IMG/VR virus record: IMGVR_UViG_3300049217_000071
Span: 62,001-126,000 of that record
DNA: 64,000 nt
Reading direction: 5' to 3' (one strand)
In this document: positions 33,131 to 41,781 of the stretch, in pieces
How the letters are laid out: each line of letters starts with the position of its first letter
Numbering within the stretch: position 1 is the first letter of the stretch
Position numbers and translations under genes: made by a program
The notes under the pieces: model-generated
Told to the model about the DNA's origin: nothing
Databases searched by the model: none
Seen by the model: only the letters and a program-made list of their open reading frames with translations

Positions 33131-35002
33131 ATGTCATCAAATCGCATTACCGAGCTGGCTGATAAGATTACCCAGGCTCGATTGGACTATTACAATGGTC
33201 AGCCAACCGTTTCTGACAAGATTTTCGATGCTTGGGCCGATGAGCTTCGCACCCTGGACGCTAATCACATAGCTTTGACGGCTGTAGGTGCTCCTGTCGG
33301 CCCTTCCGAATGGAAGAAAGCTAAGCACCAGATCCCGATGGGATCTCTCAACAAAGTCAATCAACCTGCCGAAATGTTGGACTGGGCCAGTGATAAGAAC
33401 TGCAAGTCCTGGTTTATGACGGAAAAGCTGGACGGACTCTCTATAGAAGTGATCTATGAGGGTGGTAAGGTGGTACAAGCCATTACCCGAGGTGATGGTG
33501 AGACGGGCGAAGACATTACGGTCAACGTGATTCGTATGGGTGGAGTCAATCCCGATTTGAAAACTGACTTCAATGGTTCCCTTCGTGGTGAAATCATTAT
33601 GAAGAAGAGCATTCATCAGAAGTTCTTCGCTGATAAAGCCAATCCTCGCAATGCAGCTTCTGGTGTTTCCAAGCGTTTGGATGGTGTGGATGTGGATAAG
33701 CTCGACATTCTCTTCTACCAAGTTTTGGGTGATGTAGATTTCAAAACGGAAGAAGACCAGTTCAAGTGGTTGCAGAAGCATAAAGTCGGCACTCCCAACT
33801 ATTGGATCTGGAGTTCGGCTCTTGCCATCAATGTTATGTGGCGTGAATACCAAGACAAAGAGCGCGATAAGCTGGATTATGATATCGACGGACTGGTGGT
33901 TCGTATCAATGACATGGCCGATCAAATGGCTTGTGGTGATAAAGACCTCCGCCCCTTGGGTGCTATGGCCTTCAAGTTTGACAATGAGACCCGTGAGAGC
34001 ACTATCAAAGACATCATCTGGCAGGTGGGCAACAGTGGACGCCTAACTCCGGTGGCTGTGGTGGAGCCCGTTCTCCTGGTGGGAGCTATGGTTTCCCGAG
34101 CCAGCTTGTATAACATTGCCTACATTGAGGAATTGGGTTTGGATATCGGGGCCCGCGTCCTGGTGGCCCGAGCTAATGACGTGATTCCTCGCATTGAGGA
34201 GTTGGTCAAGGGTACCAAGACGGTAGCCAAGATGCCCAAGAAGTGTCCTGATTGTGGTGGAATAGTGGATATGCAGGGTGAGAACCTGATTTGCACCAAC
34301 ACGGAGAACTGCCGATCCCAGATCATTGGTCGCATCAAGAACTGGATCAAAGAACTCAACCTGTTGGAGTGGGGGGATTCTTTGGTGGAGAAGTTGGTGG
34401 ATGCTAAGAAGGTCAAGAACATTGCTGACCTCTATACTCTTCAAGTGGATGACATTTCCAAGTTGGATCGCTTGGGAGATAAGACGGCCAAGAAGTGTTT
34501 GGATATCTTGAACGCTAATAAGAATGTAGCTTTGGAAGTCTTTTTAGGCGCTTTATCCATTCCAACTATTGGGCAATCGACGATTAAATTAATAATGAAA
34601 GATGGTTGTGATACTTTAGAAAAGTTTGGTCAGTTAAGTAGCGTTCAATTTGAGCAGGTATCGGGAGTAGGTCCGGTCAAAGCGCGATTTTTAGCTGATG
34701 GACTCAAACATAATCAGCAACTAATCCTTGATTTGTTAAAAAATGGAGTGGAGATCAAAGAAATTGTTGATGGCAAATTGACTGGTAAAAGTTTTGCTAT
34801 TACTGGAACGCTCTCTATCAAGCGCGCTGAGGTTGAAAAATTGATTCAAGACAATGGCGGTGAAGTGAAAAGTAGCGTTGGAAAAGGATTGAACTACCTA
34901 ATTATTTCTGATCCACAATCTACCAGCAGTAAAGCACAAGCCGCCCGAAAGTTGGGTACCGTTCTTATTAACGAGGCACAATTTTTAGACTTGATTAGCT
35001 AA
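33131..35002 (+). CDS. ligA: NAD+-dependent DNA ligase
   Basis: EKLDG, TRGDG..GEDIT, NPRNAA, DGLVV, Zn finger, HhH, BRCT. Confidence 0.97.
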   Translation: MSSNRITELADKITQARLDYYNGQPTVSDKIFDAWADELRTLDANHIALTAVGAPVGPSEWKKAKHQIPMGSLNKVNQPAEMLDWASDKNCKSWFMTEKLDGLSIEVIYEGGKVVQAITRGDGETGEDITVNVIRMGGVNPDLKTDFNGSLRGEIIMKKSIHQKFFADKANPRNAASGVSKRLDGVDVDKLDILFYQVLGDVDFKTEEDQFKWLQKHKVGTPNYWIWSSALAINVMWREYQDKERDKLDYDIDGLVVRINDMADQMACGDKDLRPLGAMAFKFDNETRESTIKDIIWQVGNSGRLTPVAVVEPVLLVGAMVSRASLYNIAYIEELGLDIGARVLVARANDVIPRIEELVKGTKTVAKMPKKCPDCGGIVDMQGENLICTNTENCRSQIIGRIKNWIKELNLLEWGDSLVEKLVDAKKVKNIADLYTLQVDDISKLDRLGDKTAKKCLDILNANKNVALEVFLGALSIPTIGQSTIKLIMKDGCDTLEKFGQLSSVQFEQVSGVGPVKARFLADGLKHNQQLILDLLKNGVEIKEIVDGKLTGKSFAITGTLSIKRAEVEKLIQDNGGEVKSSVGKGLNYLIISDPQSTSSKAQAARKLGTVLINEAQFLDLIS

Positions 35003-35078: not shown

Positions 35079-35669
35079 ATGAGGAAACGCAAAGTATATT
35101 TAGCTGATTCACCAGGACGCCCATCATCACGAGCAGTGTATTTCAATGGGGCTGTGTGGAAACCTGTCGATGACAAGACAAACTATTCGGTGGCTGATGT
35201 AGTTGAATGTTCGACTAATGGTAATCTTCTTTTGGTTGGTAATGAAACTTGGGAAGAAGTTTTTAGGAATAAAGGCGCTGTTAAGTGTAAAATACAAGAG
35301 TGTGAGAATGGGCCCCCTTTCATTAGGGGATTATGTAATACTCATTATCAACGAGCGCAGAGATGTGGTGATGAAAATTACATACCATATATGGCTCCCA
35401 AAGGAACTGGATTCACTCATAAATCAGGATATCGTATAGTTTCTGATGGCAATGGTGGTAAAATTAAAGAGCACCGTTTGGTAATGGAAAAGCATTTAGG
35501 TCGCAAACTTTTACCAGAAGAAAATGTTCACCACAAAAATGGAAACCGCTCTGATAATAGATTAGAAAATCTTGAATTGTGGAGTACAAAACAACCACAA
35601 GGTAAAAGAATAGAAGATTTAGTGGTGTATGCCAAGGAAATATTGAAGCTTTATGGAGATGAATTATGA
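35079..35669 (+). mobile_element. free-standing HNH endonuclease gene
   Basis: EHRLVME.HLGR.L...E.VHHKNG.R.DNR.ENLELW. Confidence 0.92.
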
Positions 35670-36495: not shown

Positions 36496-36510
36496 GATAT
36501 AGGAGGTTCT

Positions 36511-36813
36511 ATGAAGAAGTTATTTACTGCCTTGGTTTTTTGTTTGGGTCTGATGGGTCTGACAAGCTGCACCGAGAGTGTGGCTTATGCTCAGCCAGTG
36601 GTTGTCAATCAACCTGTCCAAATCTGTGACCAATATGGTTGCCGTTATGTGGTAGCCCCATACTACTACAATACGCCTCGTGTATGGGTGACCTATCGTA
36701 GGCCCTATGGCGGTTATTACTACAACGCTCCTCGCTACTATTACCGTAGTGGTGTACGTTATTACTACCGTGGCGGATATCGCGGTGGATACCGTGGAGG
36801 CTGGCGTAGGTAA
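36511..36813 (+). CDS. putative lipoprotein with Tyr/Arg/Gly-rich tail
   Basis: lipobox LTSC; YYY and RGGY repeats. Confidence 0.75.
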   Translation: MKKLFTALVFCLGLMGLTSCTESVAYAQPVVVNQPVQICDQYGCRYVVAPYYYNTPRVWVTYRRPYGGYYYNAPRYYYRSGVRYYYRGGYRGGYRGGWRR

Positions 36814-37013
36814 TGTGCACCTGTGAGAATAGAATGTGCCCCAAATGTGATCCGGGCATTGAAGCTTTCTATCAGCAAAAGCTAAAAGAAGCTGGTTCGT
36901 TTGCAGACTATATTGATGCTAAGGATGTTTGGTATGAGTATTGCGCTCTCAAAGCCGAAGAAGCGGCTGATGATGCTGTGCAACCTAAAGATGAATCGGA
37001 ATGCACTTACTAA
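36813..37013 (+). CDS. hypothetical protein
   Basis: TAATG coupling. Confidence 0.5.
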   Translation: MCTCENRMCPKCDPGIEAFYQQKLKEAGSFADYIDAKDVWYEYCALKAEEAADDAVQPKDESECTY

Positions 37014-37297
37014 TTGCTCTCCTTGCCATTTTCGGTTTAGCCTTTGCTATCAAAGAGACCTCCGGTCCTTTTGATGTCTTGGATAAGCTGCGTGGTTTAC
37101 TGATGCGAAACAAATACGTGGGAGTTTTCTTCTACGGTTTGCTTTCCTGCTATTTCTGCGTGGGTTTCCACTGCGGGTGGATCGTTTATCTATTGAGCGA
37201 GGAAAATTACACGTGGCAATTTTTTATGCTTTATGGTTTGGCTGGCGGAACGGTTTGTTTAATCATTGATGCCTTGCTCTCGAAGCTCCATCAATAA
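37001..37297 (+). CDS. membrane protein (DUF1360-like)
   Basis: GPF....LR, LLSCYFCVGFH, TM helices. Confidence 0.7.
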   Translation: MHLLIALLAIFGLAFAIKETSGPFDVLDKLRGLLMRNKYVGVFFYGLLSCYFCVGFHCGWIVYLLSEENYTWQFFMLYGLAGGTVCLIIDALLSKLHQ

Positions 37298-37964
37298 CAT
37301 TTTGTTTGGCTGATAACGGTCGCAAATTATCTAATGCCCAACATTTTTGGAAGTTAGCATCATTCATAGAAGAATAAAGCAGAGTTGATTGAGGGACAAT
37401 ATGATCAATCTGCCAAGTCCAAGTGGATGAATCATTATCATCCCAAATTTTATGATTGTACGAGCCATGATTTTGCCAGGTCATCCACGGCTCAAAATGC
37501 TTTTCGAGATGCGATTTTAATTCTTGGAAAGAATACGGAAGATATTTAGTTATCGATCCGTTTTTGGATATGGCTTTCTGAACGCTTCTACTAATAATTT
37601 TTCTCAATCGAAAAGCGATATCGTTTTGTCTTCTCTTTCTATCTTGCTCTCTTCGTATTGCCTTATGTTCTGCACGATAATTTCTGTTGTACTCTGAGAT
37701 TTTATCTTTATTCTTTTTCTTGTATGCAGATTTTCTCTTCTTCACCACTTCTGCGTGGTTCAGTCGATATCTTTTTTCGTTTTCTCTACACCGTTCTTTG
37801 TTGTTTTGGTGCCACTCAGTAGTTTTGTTATTTTGACATTCTATACAATAGGGGGCCCAATAAATAGAGATGACACCCGATTTTTTTATGTATTTTCTTT
37901 GCTTAAAGTTGTCTACTGTTAGTTCCAAACTACGATTACAGCTAATACAAATCTTGTGTTTCAT
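37263..37964 (-). mobile_element. free-standing HNH-type endonuclease gene
   Basis: CISC, YCIEC, HLEKHF..WMTW.N.G, WQIDHIVP, CWAL.NLRPL....N. Confidence 0.88.
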
Positions 37965-37988
37965 ATATAGTTATATATCGGACCGAAT

Positions 37989-38069
37989 TTTTTTATTTTG
38001 TGGGGACTTGCGCTGCTCGTTATGAGCCTTATTATAGATGGAGTCTTGACACGTCTCCACCGTGAATAA
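37989..38069 (+). pseudogene. orphaned C-terminus of the 37001 membrane gene
   Basis: FFILWGLALLVMSLIIDGVLTRLHRE* vs FFMLYGLAGGTVCLIIDALLSKLHQ*. Confidence 0.85.
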
Positions 38070-38416
38070 TCCCGTATCGGATTTATGAGATACTGGTTGA
38101 TTATCACGACGTTGTTGCTGTCTGGATGTGGCGGTGAGTTATGGTTTACTCCTAACGGGCATCAATAGAAATACATAATATTCCTCTGTATCTTCCAAAG
38201 AATGATACTATTTTTGTTTTTACTACTGGTAATGAAATGACCGCAGCATTACAAAATGTGAATAAAAATAAAGTAAGACTAATTGATCGAAAGATTATTT
38301 CTGGTCTTGTTGATAATAATGAAAATTTTTGGTTGCAGGTTAATGCATTGCTATATGATACTTTTACTGATTAAATAAATGGATATATTATGGCTAAAGT
38401 AATTAAATAAGCAGAC

Positions 38417-39880
38417 ATGGGAAGCGTCAAAGTTGAAGAATCTATTAAACAATGGACTCTTAACTATACTGACATAATTTTGAATAGTAATAAATTCTAT
38501 TCACTTGAGGTAGTTAAAACTAATAAAGGCTATTTCTTATACACCCAATATGGCAGGGTCGGAGGCACCAAAGCCAAGGAATATCGCCAATGCTCCGATC
38601 AAGCTGATGCCGAATCTGAAGCTACCAAAATCGTCAAAGCTAAAACCAAGAAAGGATATGTAGAAGTATCTTTGGTCAAGTCGGATGTCGGAAGTGATGC
38701 TGCCCAAGCTAAAATAGAAAAAGTCTCAGCTACCACTGAACAACTAAAGAAAGCTGGTATTACCGTTAAAGAAGAGCCTGCCGTTGCCAGCAAACTTCAT
38801 ACAGAGGTTCAGGATTTAGTCAGAACATGGTTCGGCGTAACTCAAGAGTTCGTCGATCTTAACCTTGACACATCCAAATGTTCTTTAGGACAACTTTCAA
38901 TTCTACAGATTACCAAAGGCAAAGACCTATTGGATGAAGCTCGCAAAATTGTTCATATGACAAAACCAGATGAACAAGAGCTTAATAAGTTGACTAATTC
39001 TTACTATAGCAATATTCCTCACAATTTTGGTTATACCAGAATTGATGCCAACGCTTTGCGTTTGGACTCAGACGTTAAGATTGATAAGGCTTTTGATATG
39101 CTTGACGTTCTAAATCAAGCTAAAGATGTCGAAGCAGTTATCTCCAAGAAGAGTGCAGTCGATGCACAGTATGCTACTCTCAATGCCGACCTTGAGTTCA
39201 TTGAGCAGGGTACTCCCACGTTCAAGTGGATTGAGAAGATGGTTCTGGAAACCCGAGCCAGCAACCACAGCGGCTTAGGTAAACTGAAGGTTCACAAGGT
39301 CTTCCGTGTCACTCGTCACGATGAGGACAAGCGATTCATTGAGAATTGCCAAGTCATCGCCAAGGAGTGCGGTAAGTTCGTGCCCTCTGATGTGTATGCT
39401 GGTTTGGTCAAGAACCGTCCTGATGTTCCCAAGGCATTGGAAGACCTCTACCACAAAGCAAATGTCCTTCCTGGTTGGCACGGAACTCGTAGAGCCAATA
39501 TGATTGGTATTACCACCAAGGGACTTCTTATTCGTCCTTCTGGTGTTATTCACGCTGGTAGTATGTTTGGAGATGGCTGTTATTTTGCTTCATCTTCGTC
39601 AAAATCAATTAATTATTGTGATGTTAAGGGATCATATTGGGCACAAGGAAATAATAAAACAGGATATCTATTTCTGTGTGATGTAGCTTTTGGAAATCAA
39701 AAAATGGCTACTGGCTCACATTATTATAATTCAAATAACATCAAGCCATATCACAGCGTATGGGCTAAAGCTGGTCAAGGCGGAGTTATTAATGATGAAA
39801 TGATTACTTACCATGCTACGGGACCAAATCAGCAGCATGCTATAAAATATATAATCGAGTTTGAGACGCAGGTGAAGTAA
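38417..39880 (+). CDS. PARP-family ADP-ribosyltransferase (WGR + regulatory + catalytic)
   Basis: NKFY..E, QYGRVG, K.KKGY; LGQLS..QI; YYS.IPH; WHGT, G.MFG.G.YFA..SSKS.NY, NDE (H-Y-E). Confidence 0.93.
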   Translation: MGSVKVEESIKQWTLNYTDIILNSNKFYSLEVVKTNKGYFLYTQYGRVGGTKAKEYRQCSDQADAESEATKIVKAKTKKGYVEVSLVKSDVGSDAAQAKIEKVSATTEQLKKAGITVKEEPAVASKLHTEVQDLVRTWFGVTQEFVDLNLDTSKCSLGQLSILQITKGKDLLDEARKIVHMTKPDEQELNKLTNSYYSNIPHNFGYTRIDANALRLDSDVKIDKAFDMLDVLNQAKDVEAVISKKSAVDAQYATLNADLEFIEQGTPTFKWIEKMVLETRASNHSGLGKLKVHKVFRVTRHDEDKRFIENCQVIAKECGKFVPSDVYAGLVKNRPDVPKALEDLYHKANVLPGWHGTRRANMIGITTKGLLIRPSGVIHAGSMFGDGCYFASSSSKSINYCDVKGSYWAQGNNKTGYLFLCDVAFGNQKMATGSHYYNSNNIKPYHSVWAKAGQGGVINDEMITYHATGPNQQHAIKYIIEFETQVK

Positions 39881-40140
39881 TGAAAACAGATGACGCTCTC
39901 TATAAAGAGATACAAAAAGATATAGCTAATGGTGTAGCGGTAGTTCTTCGAGAAACTATCACATTCGATGGTATAATCAAACAGCAATATATCGTAAGAA
40001 TGTTTTTAGATGGAATCAATATTATGCTTTGGAAATACTCAGACATCACATCTAGGTGGGAATCCAAGTCAATGAGTTGGCTACAGTTGGACGCGCAAGA
40101 AATAAAGACGCTACAAACATTTCTACTCAAGTTCAACTAA
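39880..40140 (+). CDS. hypothetical protein
   Basis: TAATG coupling to PARP. Confidence 0.55.
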   Translation: MKTDDALYKEIQKDIANGVAVVLRETITFDGIIKQQYIVRMFLDGINIMLWKYSDITSRWESKSMSWLQLDAQEIKTLQTFLLKFN

Positions 40141-40806
40141 GTGGGGCCAAGTAATTCCTCTAATAGCTCGTGAGATAGCTGATTCACTAACATTTAACAT
40201 TTTGCTCAGTTGAACGAATGTCATCCCTTCTCGATGTAATTTTCGTGCTTGAAGAACGATTTCGTCGGTAAGTTTGGCAAAGCTATTGGCACTACCTAAG
40301 ATTTTTTTACCATAGAATGGATTATCGGCCCCAAAGAACTTTCTATTTGGATTTTGGCTCATTAGCTGTTTAGATTGTTGGCTGTGTTGTTTTCCGAAGA
40401 AACTGTTTCCGGCACCCTGTCTTTGTTCTGACATTGATTGTTTGGTTTCTTCTGAATGATGTTTTCCGAGCATACTTGGTGTTCGAGGTTTTATCACTAC
40501 CGTTTTGGTAGCTAACTGTCCGCCTCCCGTTAGGTTATAGCCAAACTCTTTTTTGTTAGACCGGAAAAATTGAACCCAAAATTGTTCAGCCTCATCTATT
40601 GTTTCTTTTGTGTGTTGCTCAATTTCTATAAACTCAAAATTATCTAAACCATATTTTCTGATGCTTCGATATATTGGCTTGTTGTTGAGCTTCGTGAAAG
40701 CTTCGTATTTATGGCGGCCCTGGCGCCTTTTCATATTGTTAGTTTGCCCTACATAAAGTTTTGAGTTTGTTTTGTTGCGGATAATATAGATAGAATACAT
40801 AGTCAT
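40123..40806 (-). mobile_element. GIY-YIG endonuclease gene (NUMOD3-like repeats)
   Basis: SIY.I.N..N.KLYVGQT, GYNLT.GG, GKHHSEETK, FFGKQHS. Confidence 0.92.
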
Positions 40807-40867: not shown

Positions 40868-41350
40868 TTGATCGAAATAATTACTGGCGACCTCTTGGCG
40901 TCTAAAGAAAAGTATCTGTTGCATCAGACTAACTGTATCTCTACCAAAGGTGCAGCCGGAGTTGCCAAATCTATTTTTGATAAGTATCCTTATGCTGATT
41001 GCTATGCTGATCGTATCGAAACGTCCAAGCCCGGAACAATCGATATTCGGGGTAATGATCAAGATCAGAGGTTGATAATCAATCTTCACGGTCAGTATTA
41101 TCCTGGTCGCTCCCGATATCCTCTTTCAAGTTTAGATGGTCTAGCTCCTCGTCAGAAATACTTTTACAATGGTTTATTGCGTGTAGCCAAGATCGAGAAC
41201 CTGAAAAGTATAGCATTGCCTTGGAGGGTTGGTTGTGGTCTTGGTGGCGGAGACTGGGAATGGTATTTGGGAACGCTGACTAACTTCGCTAACTATGTAG
41301 GTGAAAAGGGCGTCAGAGTTTGTGTTTACCGTAGAGAAGGAGACGAGTAA
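40868..41350 (+). CDS. macrodomain ADP-ribose hydrolase
   Basis: I.GDLL, HQTNC, GAAGVAK.I, SIALP..VGCGLGGG.W. Confidence 0.92.
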   Translation: MIEIITGDLLASKEKYLLHQTNCISTKGAAGVAKSIFDKYPYADCYADRIETSKPGTIDIRGNDQDQRLIINLHGQYYPGRSRYPLSSLDGLAPRQKYFYNGLLRVAKIENLKSIALPWRVGCGLGGGDWEWYLGTLTNFANYVGEKGVRVCVYRREGDE

Positions 41351-41781
41351 TGGCTATCAAATTCTATCGCACTAAAGATCCGCACGGGTATATGGGCAAC
41401 TTCTATCGAGCTAGAATGTTCATCTATGGCCGTTGGTGGAACTGGGTGGAGTCTCCTTATCAGGCAGAGAAGAGTTTAGATCGAGCGGAACAGGATATGA
41501 TCTGGCAGGCACAGAAGCCAATGGAGGCCAGAGACCTGGGACAGAAGGTCAAGATGCGAGAGGGCTGGGATCTCGTCAAGGATATGGTGATGTATGATTG
41601 CGTCATGGCCAAGTTCTTGCAACACAAGAACATCCGCGACCAATTGATCGCTACCGGAGACGAAGAGCTAATCGAAGATTCACCCGTCGATTGGTATTGG
41701 GGTTGCGGCAAAGATGGAACTGGACAGAATCATCTGGGCCAGATTCTTATGCGAGTTAGAAAAGAGTTGCAGGGCGAGTAA
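41350..41781 (+). CDS. NADAR (YbiA) family protein
   Basis: FY, NF, VE..YQA.K, W..VK..VM, AKF.QH, L..TG...L.E.SP.D.YWG, GQN.LG.ILM.VR. Confidence 0.95.
   Translation: MAIKFYRTKDPHGYMGNFYRARMFIYGRWWNWVESPYQAEKSLDRAEQDMIWQAQKPMEARDLGQKVKMREGWDLVKDMVMYDCVMAKFLQHKNIRDQLIATGDEELIEDSPVDWYWGCGKDGTGQNHLGQILMRVRKELQGE

What the first reader, a model, noticed from the sequence alone, without database searches (positions are those of the whole stretch)
37220..38069. C-terminus replacement of a membrane protein by an antisense HNH
The gene ends FFMLYGLAGGTVCLIIDALLSKLHQ*, and its last 35 nt overlap the HNH 3' end on the other strand. Just beyond the HNH promoter lies a start-less FFILWGLALLVMSLIIDGVLTRLHRE* (37989-38069). 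Both copies begin at an AATTTTTT tract, a candidate crossover microhomology. This mirrors the N-terminal cases.
Basis: seen in the sequence. Interest (0 to 1): 0.8.

Follow-up and report, generated by a model that had tools for sequence, protein, structure and literature searches.

The report
Phage homing cassette replacing gene's end
A mobile nuclease gene in a giant phage has inserted into the end of a small membrane-protein gene. It brings its own replacement ending and leaves the old ending behind as a dead fragment, a trick known from yeast and fungal mitochondria but here seen spreading among phages.

Summary

**What is there**
- Gene 37001-37297 (+) encodes a 98-aa membrane protein.
- Its last 35 nt overlap, tail to tail, an antisense 233-aa HNH-type nuclease gene (37263-37964).
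- A start-less copy of the gene's last 26 codons lies at 37989-38069.

**Evidence for mobility**
- The stretch 37214-38070 (new C-terminus, HNH and fragment) is 100% or near-100% identical in two other metagenome contigs, whose flanks are only about 60-85% identical.
- A sister pair gives a clean before/after picture. L077 has no HNH and L022 has one. Their flanks of 481 and 589 nt match without a single mismatch, and about 62 nt of the intact gene is replaced by an ~815-nt cassette.
- Both left junctions fall in the TGGCAATTTTT(T) tract.

- Both partial copies travel with the cassette.
- The new last ~10 codons are the reverse complement of the nuclease's own conserved tail.
- The HNH-free alleles carry a DNA-level constraint that the fragment keeps and the new coding copy has lost.

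It works like yeast WHO elements and fungal mitochondrial mobile ORFs. Nuclease activity and the cleavage site are inferred, not shown.

The parts
37001..37297 (+). Chimeric small membrane-protein gene (98 aa, intact reading frame)
   Evidence: ORF. It has 162 homologues of 96-105 aa. Residues 1-73 are 94.5% identical to P0001 and 72/73 identical to P0246. Residues 74-98 are closest (80%) to the C-termini of HNH-bearing alleles P0004, P0053 and P0090.
37214..37225 (.). Left junction: TGGCAATTTTTT (codons W-Q-F-F)
   Evidence: L029 and L030 differ from the window up to 37213 and are identical from 37214 onward. In the pair L022/L077 identity ends just after the same CAATTTTT.
37220..37270 (+). 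Copy A: cassette-borne, recoded copy of codons FF...LIID
   Evidence: It has 27 mismatches in 66 nt to the consensus of HNH-free alleles. The position-specific codons CTT GCG ... AGC CTT ATA are replaced by TTG GCT ... TGT TTA ATC, as in all HNH-bearing alleles.
37263..37297 (.). 35-nt dual-coding overlap. The + strand reads (I)IDALLSKLHQ*; the - strand reads ...VIDGASRARHQ*
   Evidence: The tail N-x-I-D-G-x-S-R-x-R-H is conserved across the whole HNH family, including paralogues at other sites. The membrane-like antisense reading occurs only in the clade at this site.
37263..37964 (-). Free-standing HNH-type (His-Me finger) endonuclease gene, 233 aa: N-terminal 4-Cys zinc ribbon, helical repeats, C-terminal nuclease domain
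   Evidence: phrog_1035 'endonuclease VII' at E 1e-9. Invariant C6 C9 C40 C43, D187-H188, N213 and N222. Pfam HNH_4 is matched below threshold in 7 of 26 relatives. Nearest Atlas clusters are named 'HNH endonuclease family protein'. GC is 35% against 45% in the flanks.
37965..37988 (.). Spacer between the HNH start codon and the fragment, with the conserved TTATATATC motif (37971-37979); no Shine-Dalgarno sequence for the HNH
   Evidence: The same motif sits at the same place in all cassette copies; coordinates.
37989..38012 (+). Copy B, block 1: 24 nt coding FFILWGLA, nearly invariant in all cassettes and equal to the sequence of HNH-free alleles
   Evidence: The pattern is found once in the window (0 expected by chance) and, with 0-1 mismatch, in every HNH-bearing locus. 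It is also found inside HNH-free genes such as L010 with 1 mismatch.
38013..38024 (+). Copy B, scrambled 12-nt core (CTGCTCGTTATG in place of GGC GGn nnn ATC)
   Evidence: The sequence differs in each cassette lineage. The length is 12 nt in six of the seven lineages and unclear in L025.
38025..38069 (+). Copy B, tail: SLIIDGVLTRLHRE*, the displaced native-type C-terminus
   Evidence: 14 of 14 residues are identical to P0001 and P0246, the closest HNH-free relatives. The corresponding tail in L022 is 100% identical in DNA to its HNH-free partner L077.
37214..38070 (.). Minimal tract shared at ~100% identity with contigs from other samples; this is the mobile unit as seen here
   Evidence: L030 differs at 2 positions over 37214-38070. 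L029 has 0 differences over 37214-38149. Flanks are 60-85% identical or unrelated. X4 and X5 contigs inside the HNH show 0-2 differences, while X5 flanks are 84-94% identical.
38085..38168 (+). Downstream small lipoprotein gene, truncated here at codon 27 of 74
   Evidence: L029 carries the full 74-aa gene with an identical start. Homologues follow the membrane gene in most HNH-free loci. Contigs from X3 and X5 break at 38163.

Best explanation
The region holds a free-standing homing-endonuclease cassette that targets the 3' end of a small phage membrane-protein gene and replaces that end when it moves.

**The mobile unit, about 0.8-0.86 kb, has four parts**
1. A recoded copy of codons FF...LIID of the target gene (copy A).
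2. The antisense HNH gene. The reverse complement of its own conserved C-terminal tail supplies the last ~10 codons and the stop of the membrane gene.
3. A short spacer.
4. A second, non-coding copy of the target segment (copy B). Its central 12 nt are scrambled, and it runs on into the old C-terminal codons.

**Inferred steps**
- In a mixed infection the HNH cuts the HNH-free allele inside the ~62-nt FF...LIIDG segment.
- The break is repaired from the cassette-bearing genome. The left arm is the 5' part of the gene, up to TGGCAATTTTT. The right arm is the old C-terminal codons and the downstream DNA.
- The product is a chimeric but intact gene (recipient 5' part, cassette 3' end), the HNH, and a displaced fragment.
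- Copy A (many synonymous changes) and copy B (scrambled core) are both presumed uncuttable, which protects the carrier.

**Shown:** the anatomy, presence/absence in otherwise identical DNA, identical cassettes in different backgrounds, discordant 5' and 3' ancestry, and decay of the fragment.

**Inferred:** that the HNH is active, where it cuts, and that repair is the route of transfer.
For: **Before/after pair**
- L022 (HNH present) and L077 (no HNH) come from runs with adjacent SRA accession numbers.
- They match with 0 mismatches over 481 nt on the left and 589 nt on the right.
- About 62 nt of the intact gene is replaced by an ~815-nt cassette.

**Same cassette in three backgrounds**
- The window, L029 and L030 are 100% or near-100% identical over 37214-38070/38149.
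- Their 5' gene parts differ from one another. L029's N-part is 86% identical to P0005, while the window's is 94.5% identical to P0001.
- In run X5 the HNH is at least 99% identical, while flanking genes are 84-94% identical.

**Same architecture elsewhere**
- It occurs in seven more cassette lineages or contigs: L004, L020, L021, L022/L023, L024, L025/L026 and L042.
- All end ...DALLSKL[HR]Q*, and all overlap the HNH tail.
- The HNH tree and the host-gene tree disagree. The window's HNH is closest to L004/L020 (76%), but its membrane gene is closest to L022 (91%).

**Fragments decay**
- L022 has a frameshift, and L025 and L027 have stops.

**HNH-free relatives**
- They carry a single gene and no fragment.

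**Nuclease assignment**
-.

**Mechanistic precedent**
- WHO elements (PMC7282813).
- Fungal mitochondrial mobile ORFs (PMC3630166).
- Intronless homing in T4 (PMC2988022).
Against: - No biochemical or genetic evidence exists for cleavage.
- The HNH domain is below Pfam thresholds. The predicted structure found no significant PDB match (pTM 0.37).
- The direction of transfer is unknown. L077 could in principle be a revertant.
- All comparisons rest on metagenome contigs. Reads were not available, so the frequency of the two forms in any population is unknown.
- The left boundary may reflect only where homology ends, not where the cut is.
- The strong conservation of the 24-nt block in copy B is not explained by the homing model alone.
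- L042 has a shorter fragment without that block, so the architecture is not uniform.
Confidence: 0.8

Rival explanations
1. The cassette is a passenger. The HNH is inactive or has another role, and the block spreads only by ordinary homologous recombination between co-infecting mosaic phages. The duplicated segment is a scar of one ancient illegitimate insertion.
For: - The nuclease domain is only weakly recognisable.
- These phages are highly mosaic: the flanks of the window and L022 are unrelated beyond the gene.
- Three other nuclease genes of this family elsewhere in related contigs show no such arrangement.
Against: - All catalytic-motif residues are invariant in 26 relatives at 43-76% identity, which indicates purifying selection on the nuclease.
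- The cassette is ~100% identical in backgrounds that are 60-85% identical, with a sharp common left boundary. That is the signature of a driven element rather than random exchange.
- Both target copies in carriers are altered exactly where HNH-free alleles are most conserved.
Confidence: 0.13
2. The segment at 37989-38069 is the end of a separate tandem paralogue, or a chance similarity, unrelated to the HNH.
For: None beyond the bare similarity; the fragment has no start codon.
Against: - The profile HMM gives E 3.4e-6, with the next best frame at 0.31.
- No HNH-free locus among 60 examined has a second copy or fragment.
- The fragment appears only next to the HNH and always on its 5' side.
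- In the L022/L077 pair the fragment's tail is the recipient's own C-terminus, base for base.
Confidence: 0.02
3. The HNH sits in a self-splicing intron or intein, and the fragment is the true second exon.
For: Endonuclease genes inside phage genes are often intron-borne (PMC2988022).
Against: - No Rfam family matches 36800-38500 at E up to 1.
- The HNH is antisense to the host gene.
- The host reading frame is closed by its own in-frame stop at 37295-37297.
- The would-be exon 2 has a scrambled core here (ALLVM for AGGxI) and is frameshifted or stopped in L022, L025 and L027.
Confidence: 0.01
4. Sub-question on why copy B persists. It may be kept because it carries a cis element: a rightward promoter for the downstream lipoprotein gene, and/or the promoter/operator of the HNH. 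On this reading it is not a neutral fossil or a mere homology arm.
For: **Position-specific codon use in HNH-free alleles**

| Codon at the constrained position | Share there | Share of that codon in other columns of the same amino acid |
|---|---|---|
| CTT | 69% and 85% | 8-23% |
| GCG | 57% | about 5% |
| ATA | 93% | 10-30% |

- Copy B keeps these blocks, and the 12-nt spacing between them is kept in most lineages, while the spacer sequence is free to vary. Copy A has lost them.
- L042 lacks block 1, but at the same place it has a near-consensus TTGACG-17-TATAAT pointing at the lipoprotein gene.
- The I-TevI precedent: an operator resembling the homing site overlaps that endonuclease's own promoter (PMC2988022).
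Against: - The consensus scan does not call a + strand promoter here. It calls only a - strand TGGAGA-17-TATAAT at 38059-38031, whose -35 is not conserved in other cassettes.
- No hairpin is supported.
- There are no expression data.
Confidence: 0.4

Closest known systems
WHO elements of Torulaspora/Lachancea yeasts, which home into FBA1 (Coughlan et al. 2020, PMC7282813)
   Same: - The endonuclease gene lies next to its target gene.
[quoted passage not shown]
- The recipient's old 3' end is pushed downstream as a non-coding fragment. That fragment serves as the homology arm and then decays.
- The 5' and 3' parts of the host gene have discordant histories.
   Different: - The host is a bacteriophage, not a yeast chromosome.
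- The nuclease is an HNH with a zinc ribbon, not an intein-derived LAGLIDADG/zinc-finger protein.
- The nuclease gene is antisense and overlaps the host gene by 35 nt, so its own tail encodes the host's last codons on the other strand.
- No tandem clusters of fragments were seen.
Mobile ORFs (mORFs) of fungal mitochondria with C-terminal duplication: Allomyces macrogynus atp6; Glomus atp6, atp9, cox2 and nad3 (PMC3630166)
   Same: - An endonuclease ORF is inserted in the 3' part of a gene together with a foreign C-terminal segment.
- The native C-terminus is left downstream.
- The native copy is closer to the relatives' gene than the inserted copy is.
   Different: - Those ORFs are LAGLIDADG or GIY-YIG, usually in the same orientation and often in frame with the host gene.
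- Here the family is HNH, the gene is antisense, the overlap is dual-coding, and the setting is a virus.
Free-standing homing endonucleases of T4-like phages (seg and mob genes; 'intronless homing'; PMC2988022)
   Same: - A phage-borne free-standing HNH or GIY-YIG gene shows presence/absence polymorphism between related phages.
- It spreads by double-strand-break repair with co-conversion of flanks.
- It often lacks a translation initiation region of its own.
   Different: - T4 seg and mob genes sit between genes, or split a gene (Aeh1 nrdA).
- In the review text searched, the term 'duplicat' has zero occurrences. That is a term search only; no replacement or duplication of the target gene's end turned up for them.
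I-TevI autorepression (operator resembling the homing site at the endonuclease's own promoter; PMC2988022)
   Same: A near-copy of the target sequence lies immediately upstream of the endonuclease ORF and lacks a cleavable core.
   Different: Binding and repression are untested here. I-TevI is intron-encoded and belongs to the GIY-YIG family.

Membership tests
Free-standing homing endonuclease gene (phage 'intronless homing' type) | Encodes a nuclease of a recognised homing-endonuclease family (here HNH / His-Me finger) | tested here: inconclusive
   - The motif D187-H188 ... N213 ... N222 is invariant in 26 relatives.
- phrog_1035 'endonuclease VII' matches at E 1e-9.
- Atlas neighbours are named HNH endonuclease.
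- Pfam HNH_4 matches only below threshold, and there is no significant PDB fold match.
Free-standing homing endonuclease gene (phage 'intronless homing' type) | Present or absent at the same site in otherwise near-identical genomes | tested here: met
   L022 against L077: 0 mismatches in the 481-nt and 589-nt flanks, with the cassette present in one only. Gene maps of P0001 and P0246 lack it.
Free-standing homing endonuclease gene (phage 'intronless homing' type) | Element more similar between genomes than its flanks (horizontal spread) | tested here: met
   37214-38070/38149 is ~100% identical in L029 and L030, with flanks at 60-85% identity or unrelated. Run X5 shows the same pattern.
Free-standing homing endonuclease gene (phage 'intronless homing' type) | Not inside a self-splicing intron or intein | tested here: met
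   No Rfam hit. The gene is antisense, and the host ORF is closed by its own stop.
Free-standing homing endonuclease gene (phage 'intronless homing' type) | Cuts the element-free allele at or near the insertion site; the carrier allele is resistant | not testable with these tools
   Only indirect evidence: copy A is recoded and the core of copy B is scrambled, exactly where HNH-free alleles are most conserved.
3'-end-replacing homing elements (WHO / fungal mORF kind) | Full-length host gene is a chimera of the recipient's 5' part and an element-borne 3' end | tested here: met
3'-end-replacing homing elements (WHO / fungal mORF kind) | A fragment of the host gene's 3' end lies beyond the endonuclease gene and is free to decay | tested here: met
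   The fragment is present in all nine cassette loci. It is frameshifted in L022 and stopped in L025 and L027.
3'-end-replacing homing elements (WHO / fungal mORF kind) | Homology of the endonuclease to WHO/HO (intein-like LAGLIDADG) or to mitochondrial LAGLIDADG/GIY-YIG ORFs | tested here: not met
   The protein is an HNH-type nuclease with a 4-Cys ribbon. It therefore works like these elements but is not their relative.
3'-end-replacing homing elements (WHO / fungal mORF kind) | Tandem build-up of several endonuclease genes and fragments by repeated homing | tested here: not met
   There is at most one extra fragment per locus.
DUF1360 (PF07098) membrane proteins, as identity of the target gene | Match to the Pfam model above its gathering score | tested here: not met
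   E 0.37-0.78 and 10-11 bits against a cut-off of 21. The target stays an unnamed family of ~98-aa membrane proteins with a conserved C-Y-F-C-x-G-x-H-C-G-W motif.

The most novel reading that the evidence does not exclude
The cassette and its target form a co-adapted three-layer overlap.

1. The HNH-free gene end is doubly constrained: it codes protein and it carries a DNA-level element, most likely a promoter for the adjacent lipoprotein gene. That constraint is why the nuclease can rely on it as a target.
2. After insertion the two functions are split between the two copies. Copy A keeps the coding function and copy B keeps the cis element. Copy B may also serve as an operator or promoter for the HNH, as in I-TevI.
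3. The host protein's last ten residues are encoded on the antisense strand of the nuclease's own conserved tail, so neither gene can change there without the other.

This would be a phage example of a selfish element that makes itself hard to lose by sharing codons with its host gene.
Probability: 0.3. Interest if true: 0.75.

Novelty: new variant of a known kind. Interest (0 to 1): 0.6.

Why it matters
**A mode of homing not previously tied to phages in what I read.** Replacement of a gene's 3' end, leaving a displaced fragment that serves as the homology arm, was worked out in yeast nuclei and fungal mitochondria. Here the same mode operates, apparently actively, among uncultured giant phages of soil, moss and freshwater, with an unrelated nuclease family. 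In the papers I searched I found no phage case described this way.

**Practical consequences**
- Short start-less gene ends next to phage nuclease genes can be read as footprints that reveal the target site and the direction of invasion.
- Gene callers dropped the overlapped host gene in the carrier contigs, so such chimeric genes are under-counted.
- The natural before/after pair, together with the recoded and scrambled copies, defines a ~62-nt candidate recognition region for a new HNH specificity that can be tested directly.

**A point for evolution.** The antisense sharing of codons between the parasite and its host gene is an unusual form of entanglement.

Tried and rejected
- **Phage GenBank collection:** blastn of 36500-38500 found no match.
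- **PDB:** neither a profile search nor a Foldseek search of the AlphaFold model of the HNH (pLDDT 85, pTM 0.37) gave a significant hit, so the fold was not confirmed structurally.
- **Hairpin in the scrambled core:** the scan flagged a terminator-like hairpin at 38015-38027. Folding the same region in seven cassette lineages and three HNH-free alleles gave z-scores between -0.9 and +0.9, so I rejected it.
- **Intron:** no Rfam hit.
- **Is the membrane-like antisense reading built into every member of the HNH family?** No. It is absent in paralogues L002, L003, L016, L046 and L064.
- **Paralogous HNH genes elsewhere in this genome (L002, L003):** they lie on the same strand as their neighbours, with no overlap and no duplicated gene ends.
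- **DNA of the window's nearest HNH-free relatives (contigs of P0001 and P0246):** it could not be fetched; only gene maps were available. The window's own junctions are therefore mapped through L029 and L030 and by analogy with L022/L077.
- **A + strand sigma-70 promoter in copy B:** the consensus scan does not call one. The idea is kept only as a hypothesis.

Full report
**Setting.** The window is bases 62001-126000 of a 268-kb IMG/VR virus record, estimated 62% complete. It was assembled from a moss metagenome. The neighbourhood is typical of a very large phage: an NAD-dependent DNA ligase (33131-35002), a PARP-like gene (38417-39880; WGR, PARP_reg and PARP domains), and NADAR and R2K genes further on.

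**The observation.**
- The 98-aa ORF 37001-37297 (+) and the 233-aa ORF 37263-37964 (-) overlap tail to tail by 35 nt.
- 37989-38069 encodes, without a start, 26 residues and a stop that resemble the end of the 98-aa protein.
- AATTTTTT begins both copies.
- A profile of 120 homologues was scored against every stop-to-stop frame of the window. It picks out the fragment as the only hit besides the gene (E 3.4e-6; next best 0.31).

**The target gene.**
- The 98-aa protein belongs to a large unnamed family of 96-105-aa membrane proteins found on contigs up to 506 kb.
- Pfam DUF1360 is matched only far below threshold.
- In most HNH-free loci examined, the gene is followed within 4-28 nt by a small lipoprotein gene.

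**The nuclease.**
- The 233-aa protein has four invariant cysteines at the N-terminus, then a long helical region, then a C-terminal block with invariant D-H ... N ... N.
- It matches phrog_1035 'endonuclease VII' at E 1e-9.
- Its relatives graze Pfam HNH_4 and HNH_5. Its nearest ESM Atlas clusters are viral 'HNH endonuclease family' proteins.
- Sequence and fold searches of the PDB were uninformative.
- I treat it as a probable His-Me-finger nuclease.
- The family has more than 460 members. Only a tight clade (P0122-P0129, 60-76% identity) and the more distant L042 protein sit at this site.

- The closest relatives are P0001 and P0246. P0246 is identical to the window's protein in 72 of the first 73 residues.
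- Both are 99 aa and end ...SLIIDGVLTRLHRE, exactly the tail of the window's fragment.
- Their contigs show the order 66 aa / 99 aa / 75 aa / PARP with no HNH. Their DNA could not be fetched.
- Among 44 distinct HNH-free coding sequences, none has a tandem paralogue or an extra fragment.

**A clean before/after pair.** L077 is an 18.6-kb contig without the HNH. L022 is a contig with it. The two runs have adjacent SRA accession numbers.
- They are identical without a single mismatch over 481 nt to the left and 589 nt to the right.
- Between those flanks, about 62 nt of L077 is replaced in L022 by an ~815-nt cassette. The replaced stretch runs from just after TGGCAATTTTT to just before GTGCTGG and codes F...LIIDG.
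- The cassette consists of:
  - a diverged copy of the replaced segment (15 mismatches in its 60 nt);
  - the codons ALLSKLRQ* lying on the antisense of the HNH tail;
  - the HNH;
  - a 21-nt spacer;
  - a second diverged copy of the segment.
- Only the last nine codons of the fragment are the recipient's own DNA.

**The same cassette in different phages.** The window's exact HNH protein is also encoded on L029 (soil) and L030 (a third sample).
- L029 is 100% identical to the window from 37214 to 38149.
- L030 is identical from 37214 to 38070 except at two positions.
- To the left of 37214 both differ from the window and from each other. Further out L029 is unrelated to the window.
- L029's membrane protein is a chimera. 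Its first 73 residues are 86% identical to P0005, and its last 25 are identical to the window's.
- Contigs of two more runs hold the HNH with 0-2 differences, while their flanking genes are 84-94% identical.
- The shared boundary sequence is only 12 nt long, and the boundaries on the right differ between contigs. Chimeric assembly is therefore an unlikely explanation, although reads were not available to exclude it.

**Other lineages.**
- The same architecture occurs in L004, L020, L021, L024, L025/L026 and L042, with HNH proteins 45-76% identical to the window's.
- The histories are discordant. The window's HNH is nearest to L004/L020, whereas its host gene is nearest to L022.
- Within the HNH, the N-terminal half of the window is 52% identical to L022 and the C-terminal half 83%.
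- 7 of 120 family members end in the cassette-type ...D[AS]LL[SL]KL[HR]Q. This is an undercount, because gene callers skipped the overlapped gene in L028 and L029.

1. *The new C-terminus is the nuclease's own tail read backwards.*
   - The HNH tail N-x-I-D-G-x-S-R-x-R-H is conserved throughout the family, including paralogues elsewhere.
   - The host's new last ten codons are the reverse complement of that tail.
   - Paralogues' tails do not give a membrane-like reading, so this dual coding is specific to the clade at this site.
2. *HNH-free alleles carry a DNA-level constraint in the target segment.* Codon use there is position-specific: CTT GCG GGC ... AGC CTT ATA, at 57-93%. Elsewhere in the gene the same amino acids use TTA, GCT and ATT.
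3. *The two cassette copies divide this inheritance.*
   - Copy A is recoded throughout (24-32 mismatches of 66).
   - Copy B keeps the 24-nt block coding FFILWGLA and the block AGCCTTAT almost unchanged in all lineages.
   - The 12 nt between those blocks are different in every lineage, and the 12-nt length is kept in six of the seven.

**Mechanism.** The simplest reading is homing, as worked out for yeast WHO elements and proposed for fungal mitochondrial mobile ORFs.
- The nuclease cuts the HNH-free segment.
- The gap is repaired from a carrier genome. The arms are the gene's 5' part and the old C-terminal codons plus downstream DNA.
- The carrier's two copies are immune.
- The T tract marks the left junction in both independent comparisons. 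It could equally be merely the last conserved bases before the recoded copy begins.
- Why copy B is so well conserved is open. It may hold a promoter for the now separated lipoprotein gene. L042 has a near-consensus TTGACG-17-TATAAT at that place. It may instead hold the HNH's promoter or operator, as for I-TevI. It may simply be renewed at each homing event.
- A hairpin was tested and rejected.

**Origin.** How the first cassette arose is unresolved. It could have been an antisense insertion at LIID|G followed by duplication, or capture of a neighbouring gene end from a donor followed by one illegitimate join at the T tract.
- L042 has a fragment that starts only at AGCCTTATA.
- L027 appears to sit at a different gene, with decayed pieces of the membrane gene on both sides of its HNH.
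- Together these show that the junctions have been remodelled more than once.

**Verdict.** The finding is real and correctly interpreted in outline. It is an actively spreading, 3'-end-replacing homing cassette in phages.
- It works like WHO elements and mitochondrial mobile ORFs but is unrelated to them.
- It differs from them in the antisense codon sharing with its host gene.
- Cleavage activity, the cut site and the role of the fragment remain to be tested.

Noticed in passing
window 35079-35669 (+): A second free-standing endonuclease gene (HNH_3, E 5e-12) lies just after the DNA ligase. It is absent at this place from the related contigs of P0001, P0246 and L077 and present in the contigs of P0123, so it too is a presence/absence polymorphism.
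   Followed up: partly
window 40123-40806 (-): A GIY-YIG/NUMOD3 endonuclease gene lies antisense between the PARP-adjacent genes. It is not in the gene maps of the P0001 and P0246 contigs. That makes three endonuclease genes of three families within 6 kb.
   Followed up: partly
window 38085-38416: The small lipoprotein gene downstream of the fragment stops at codon 27 of 74 (L029 has the full gene). From 38164 a 253-nt stretch of 26% GC replaces the rest. Contigs of two other runs also break at 38163, so this is a second, independent rearrangement junction.
   Followed up: partly
window 38417-39880 and 41350-41781: The phage encodes a full WGR / PARP_reg / PARP-catalytic protein (487 aa), with a NADAR-domain gene and R2K genes close by. 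This ADP-ribosylation gene set is conserved in the related giant-phage contigs.
   Followed up: no
L042:2501-3760 (JGI contig Ga0187810_10000063): A more distant HNH (255 aa, 45% identity) sits at the same site with the same overlap and the same host C-terminus. Its fragment begins only at AGCCTTATA and is preceded by a near-consensus sigma-70-like TTGACG-17-TATAAT on the + strand. This HNH has its own AGGA ribosome-binding site.
   Followed up: partly
L027:3800-4681 (Logan SRR28211853): An HNH 60% identical to the window's keeps the conserved upstream block. Beyond its 3' end the frame reads ...QFNILMLLV*TNVLFSVLHR*, attached to an unrelated upstream protein. This looks like a cassette carried to another site with decayed pieces of the membrane gene on both sides. 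The contig ends 94 nt further on.
   Followed up: partly
HNH-free alleles L005-L019, L031-L072 (codons for L-A-G ... S-L-I near the 3' end): There is strong position-specific codon use: CTT 69% and 85%, GCG 57%, AGC 74%, ATA 93%. It occurs in genes that otherwise prefer TTA, GCT and ATT, across alleles only 43-73% identical in protein. This points to a DNA-level element inside the coding sequence.
   Followed up: partly
L028, L029, and the contigs of P0123: Automatic gene calling omitted the membrane gene wherever it overlaps the HNH, leaving an apparent 250-265-nt gap. Protein databases therefore under-represent the chimeric alleles.
   Followed up: no
window 37263-37964 compared with L022 520-1221: The HNH itself is mosaic. 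Its C-terminal (nuclease) half is 83% identical between the window and L022, while its N-terminal (zinc ribbon and helical) half is 52% identical. The window's N-terminal half groups with L004/L020 instead (74%).
   Followed up: partly
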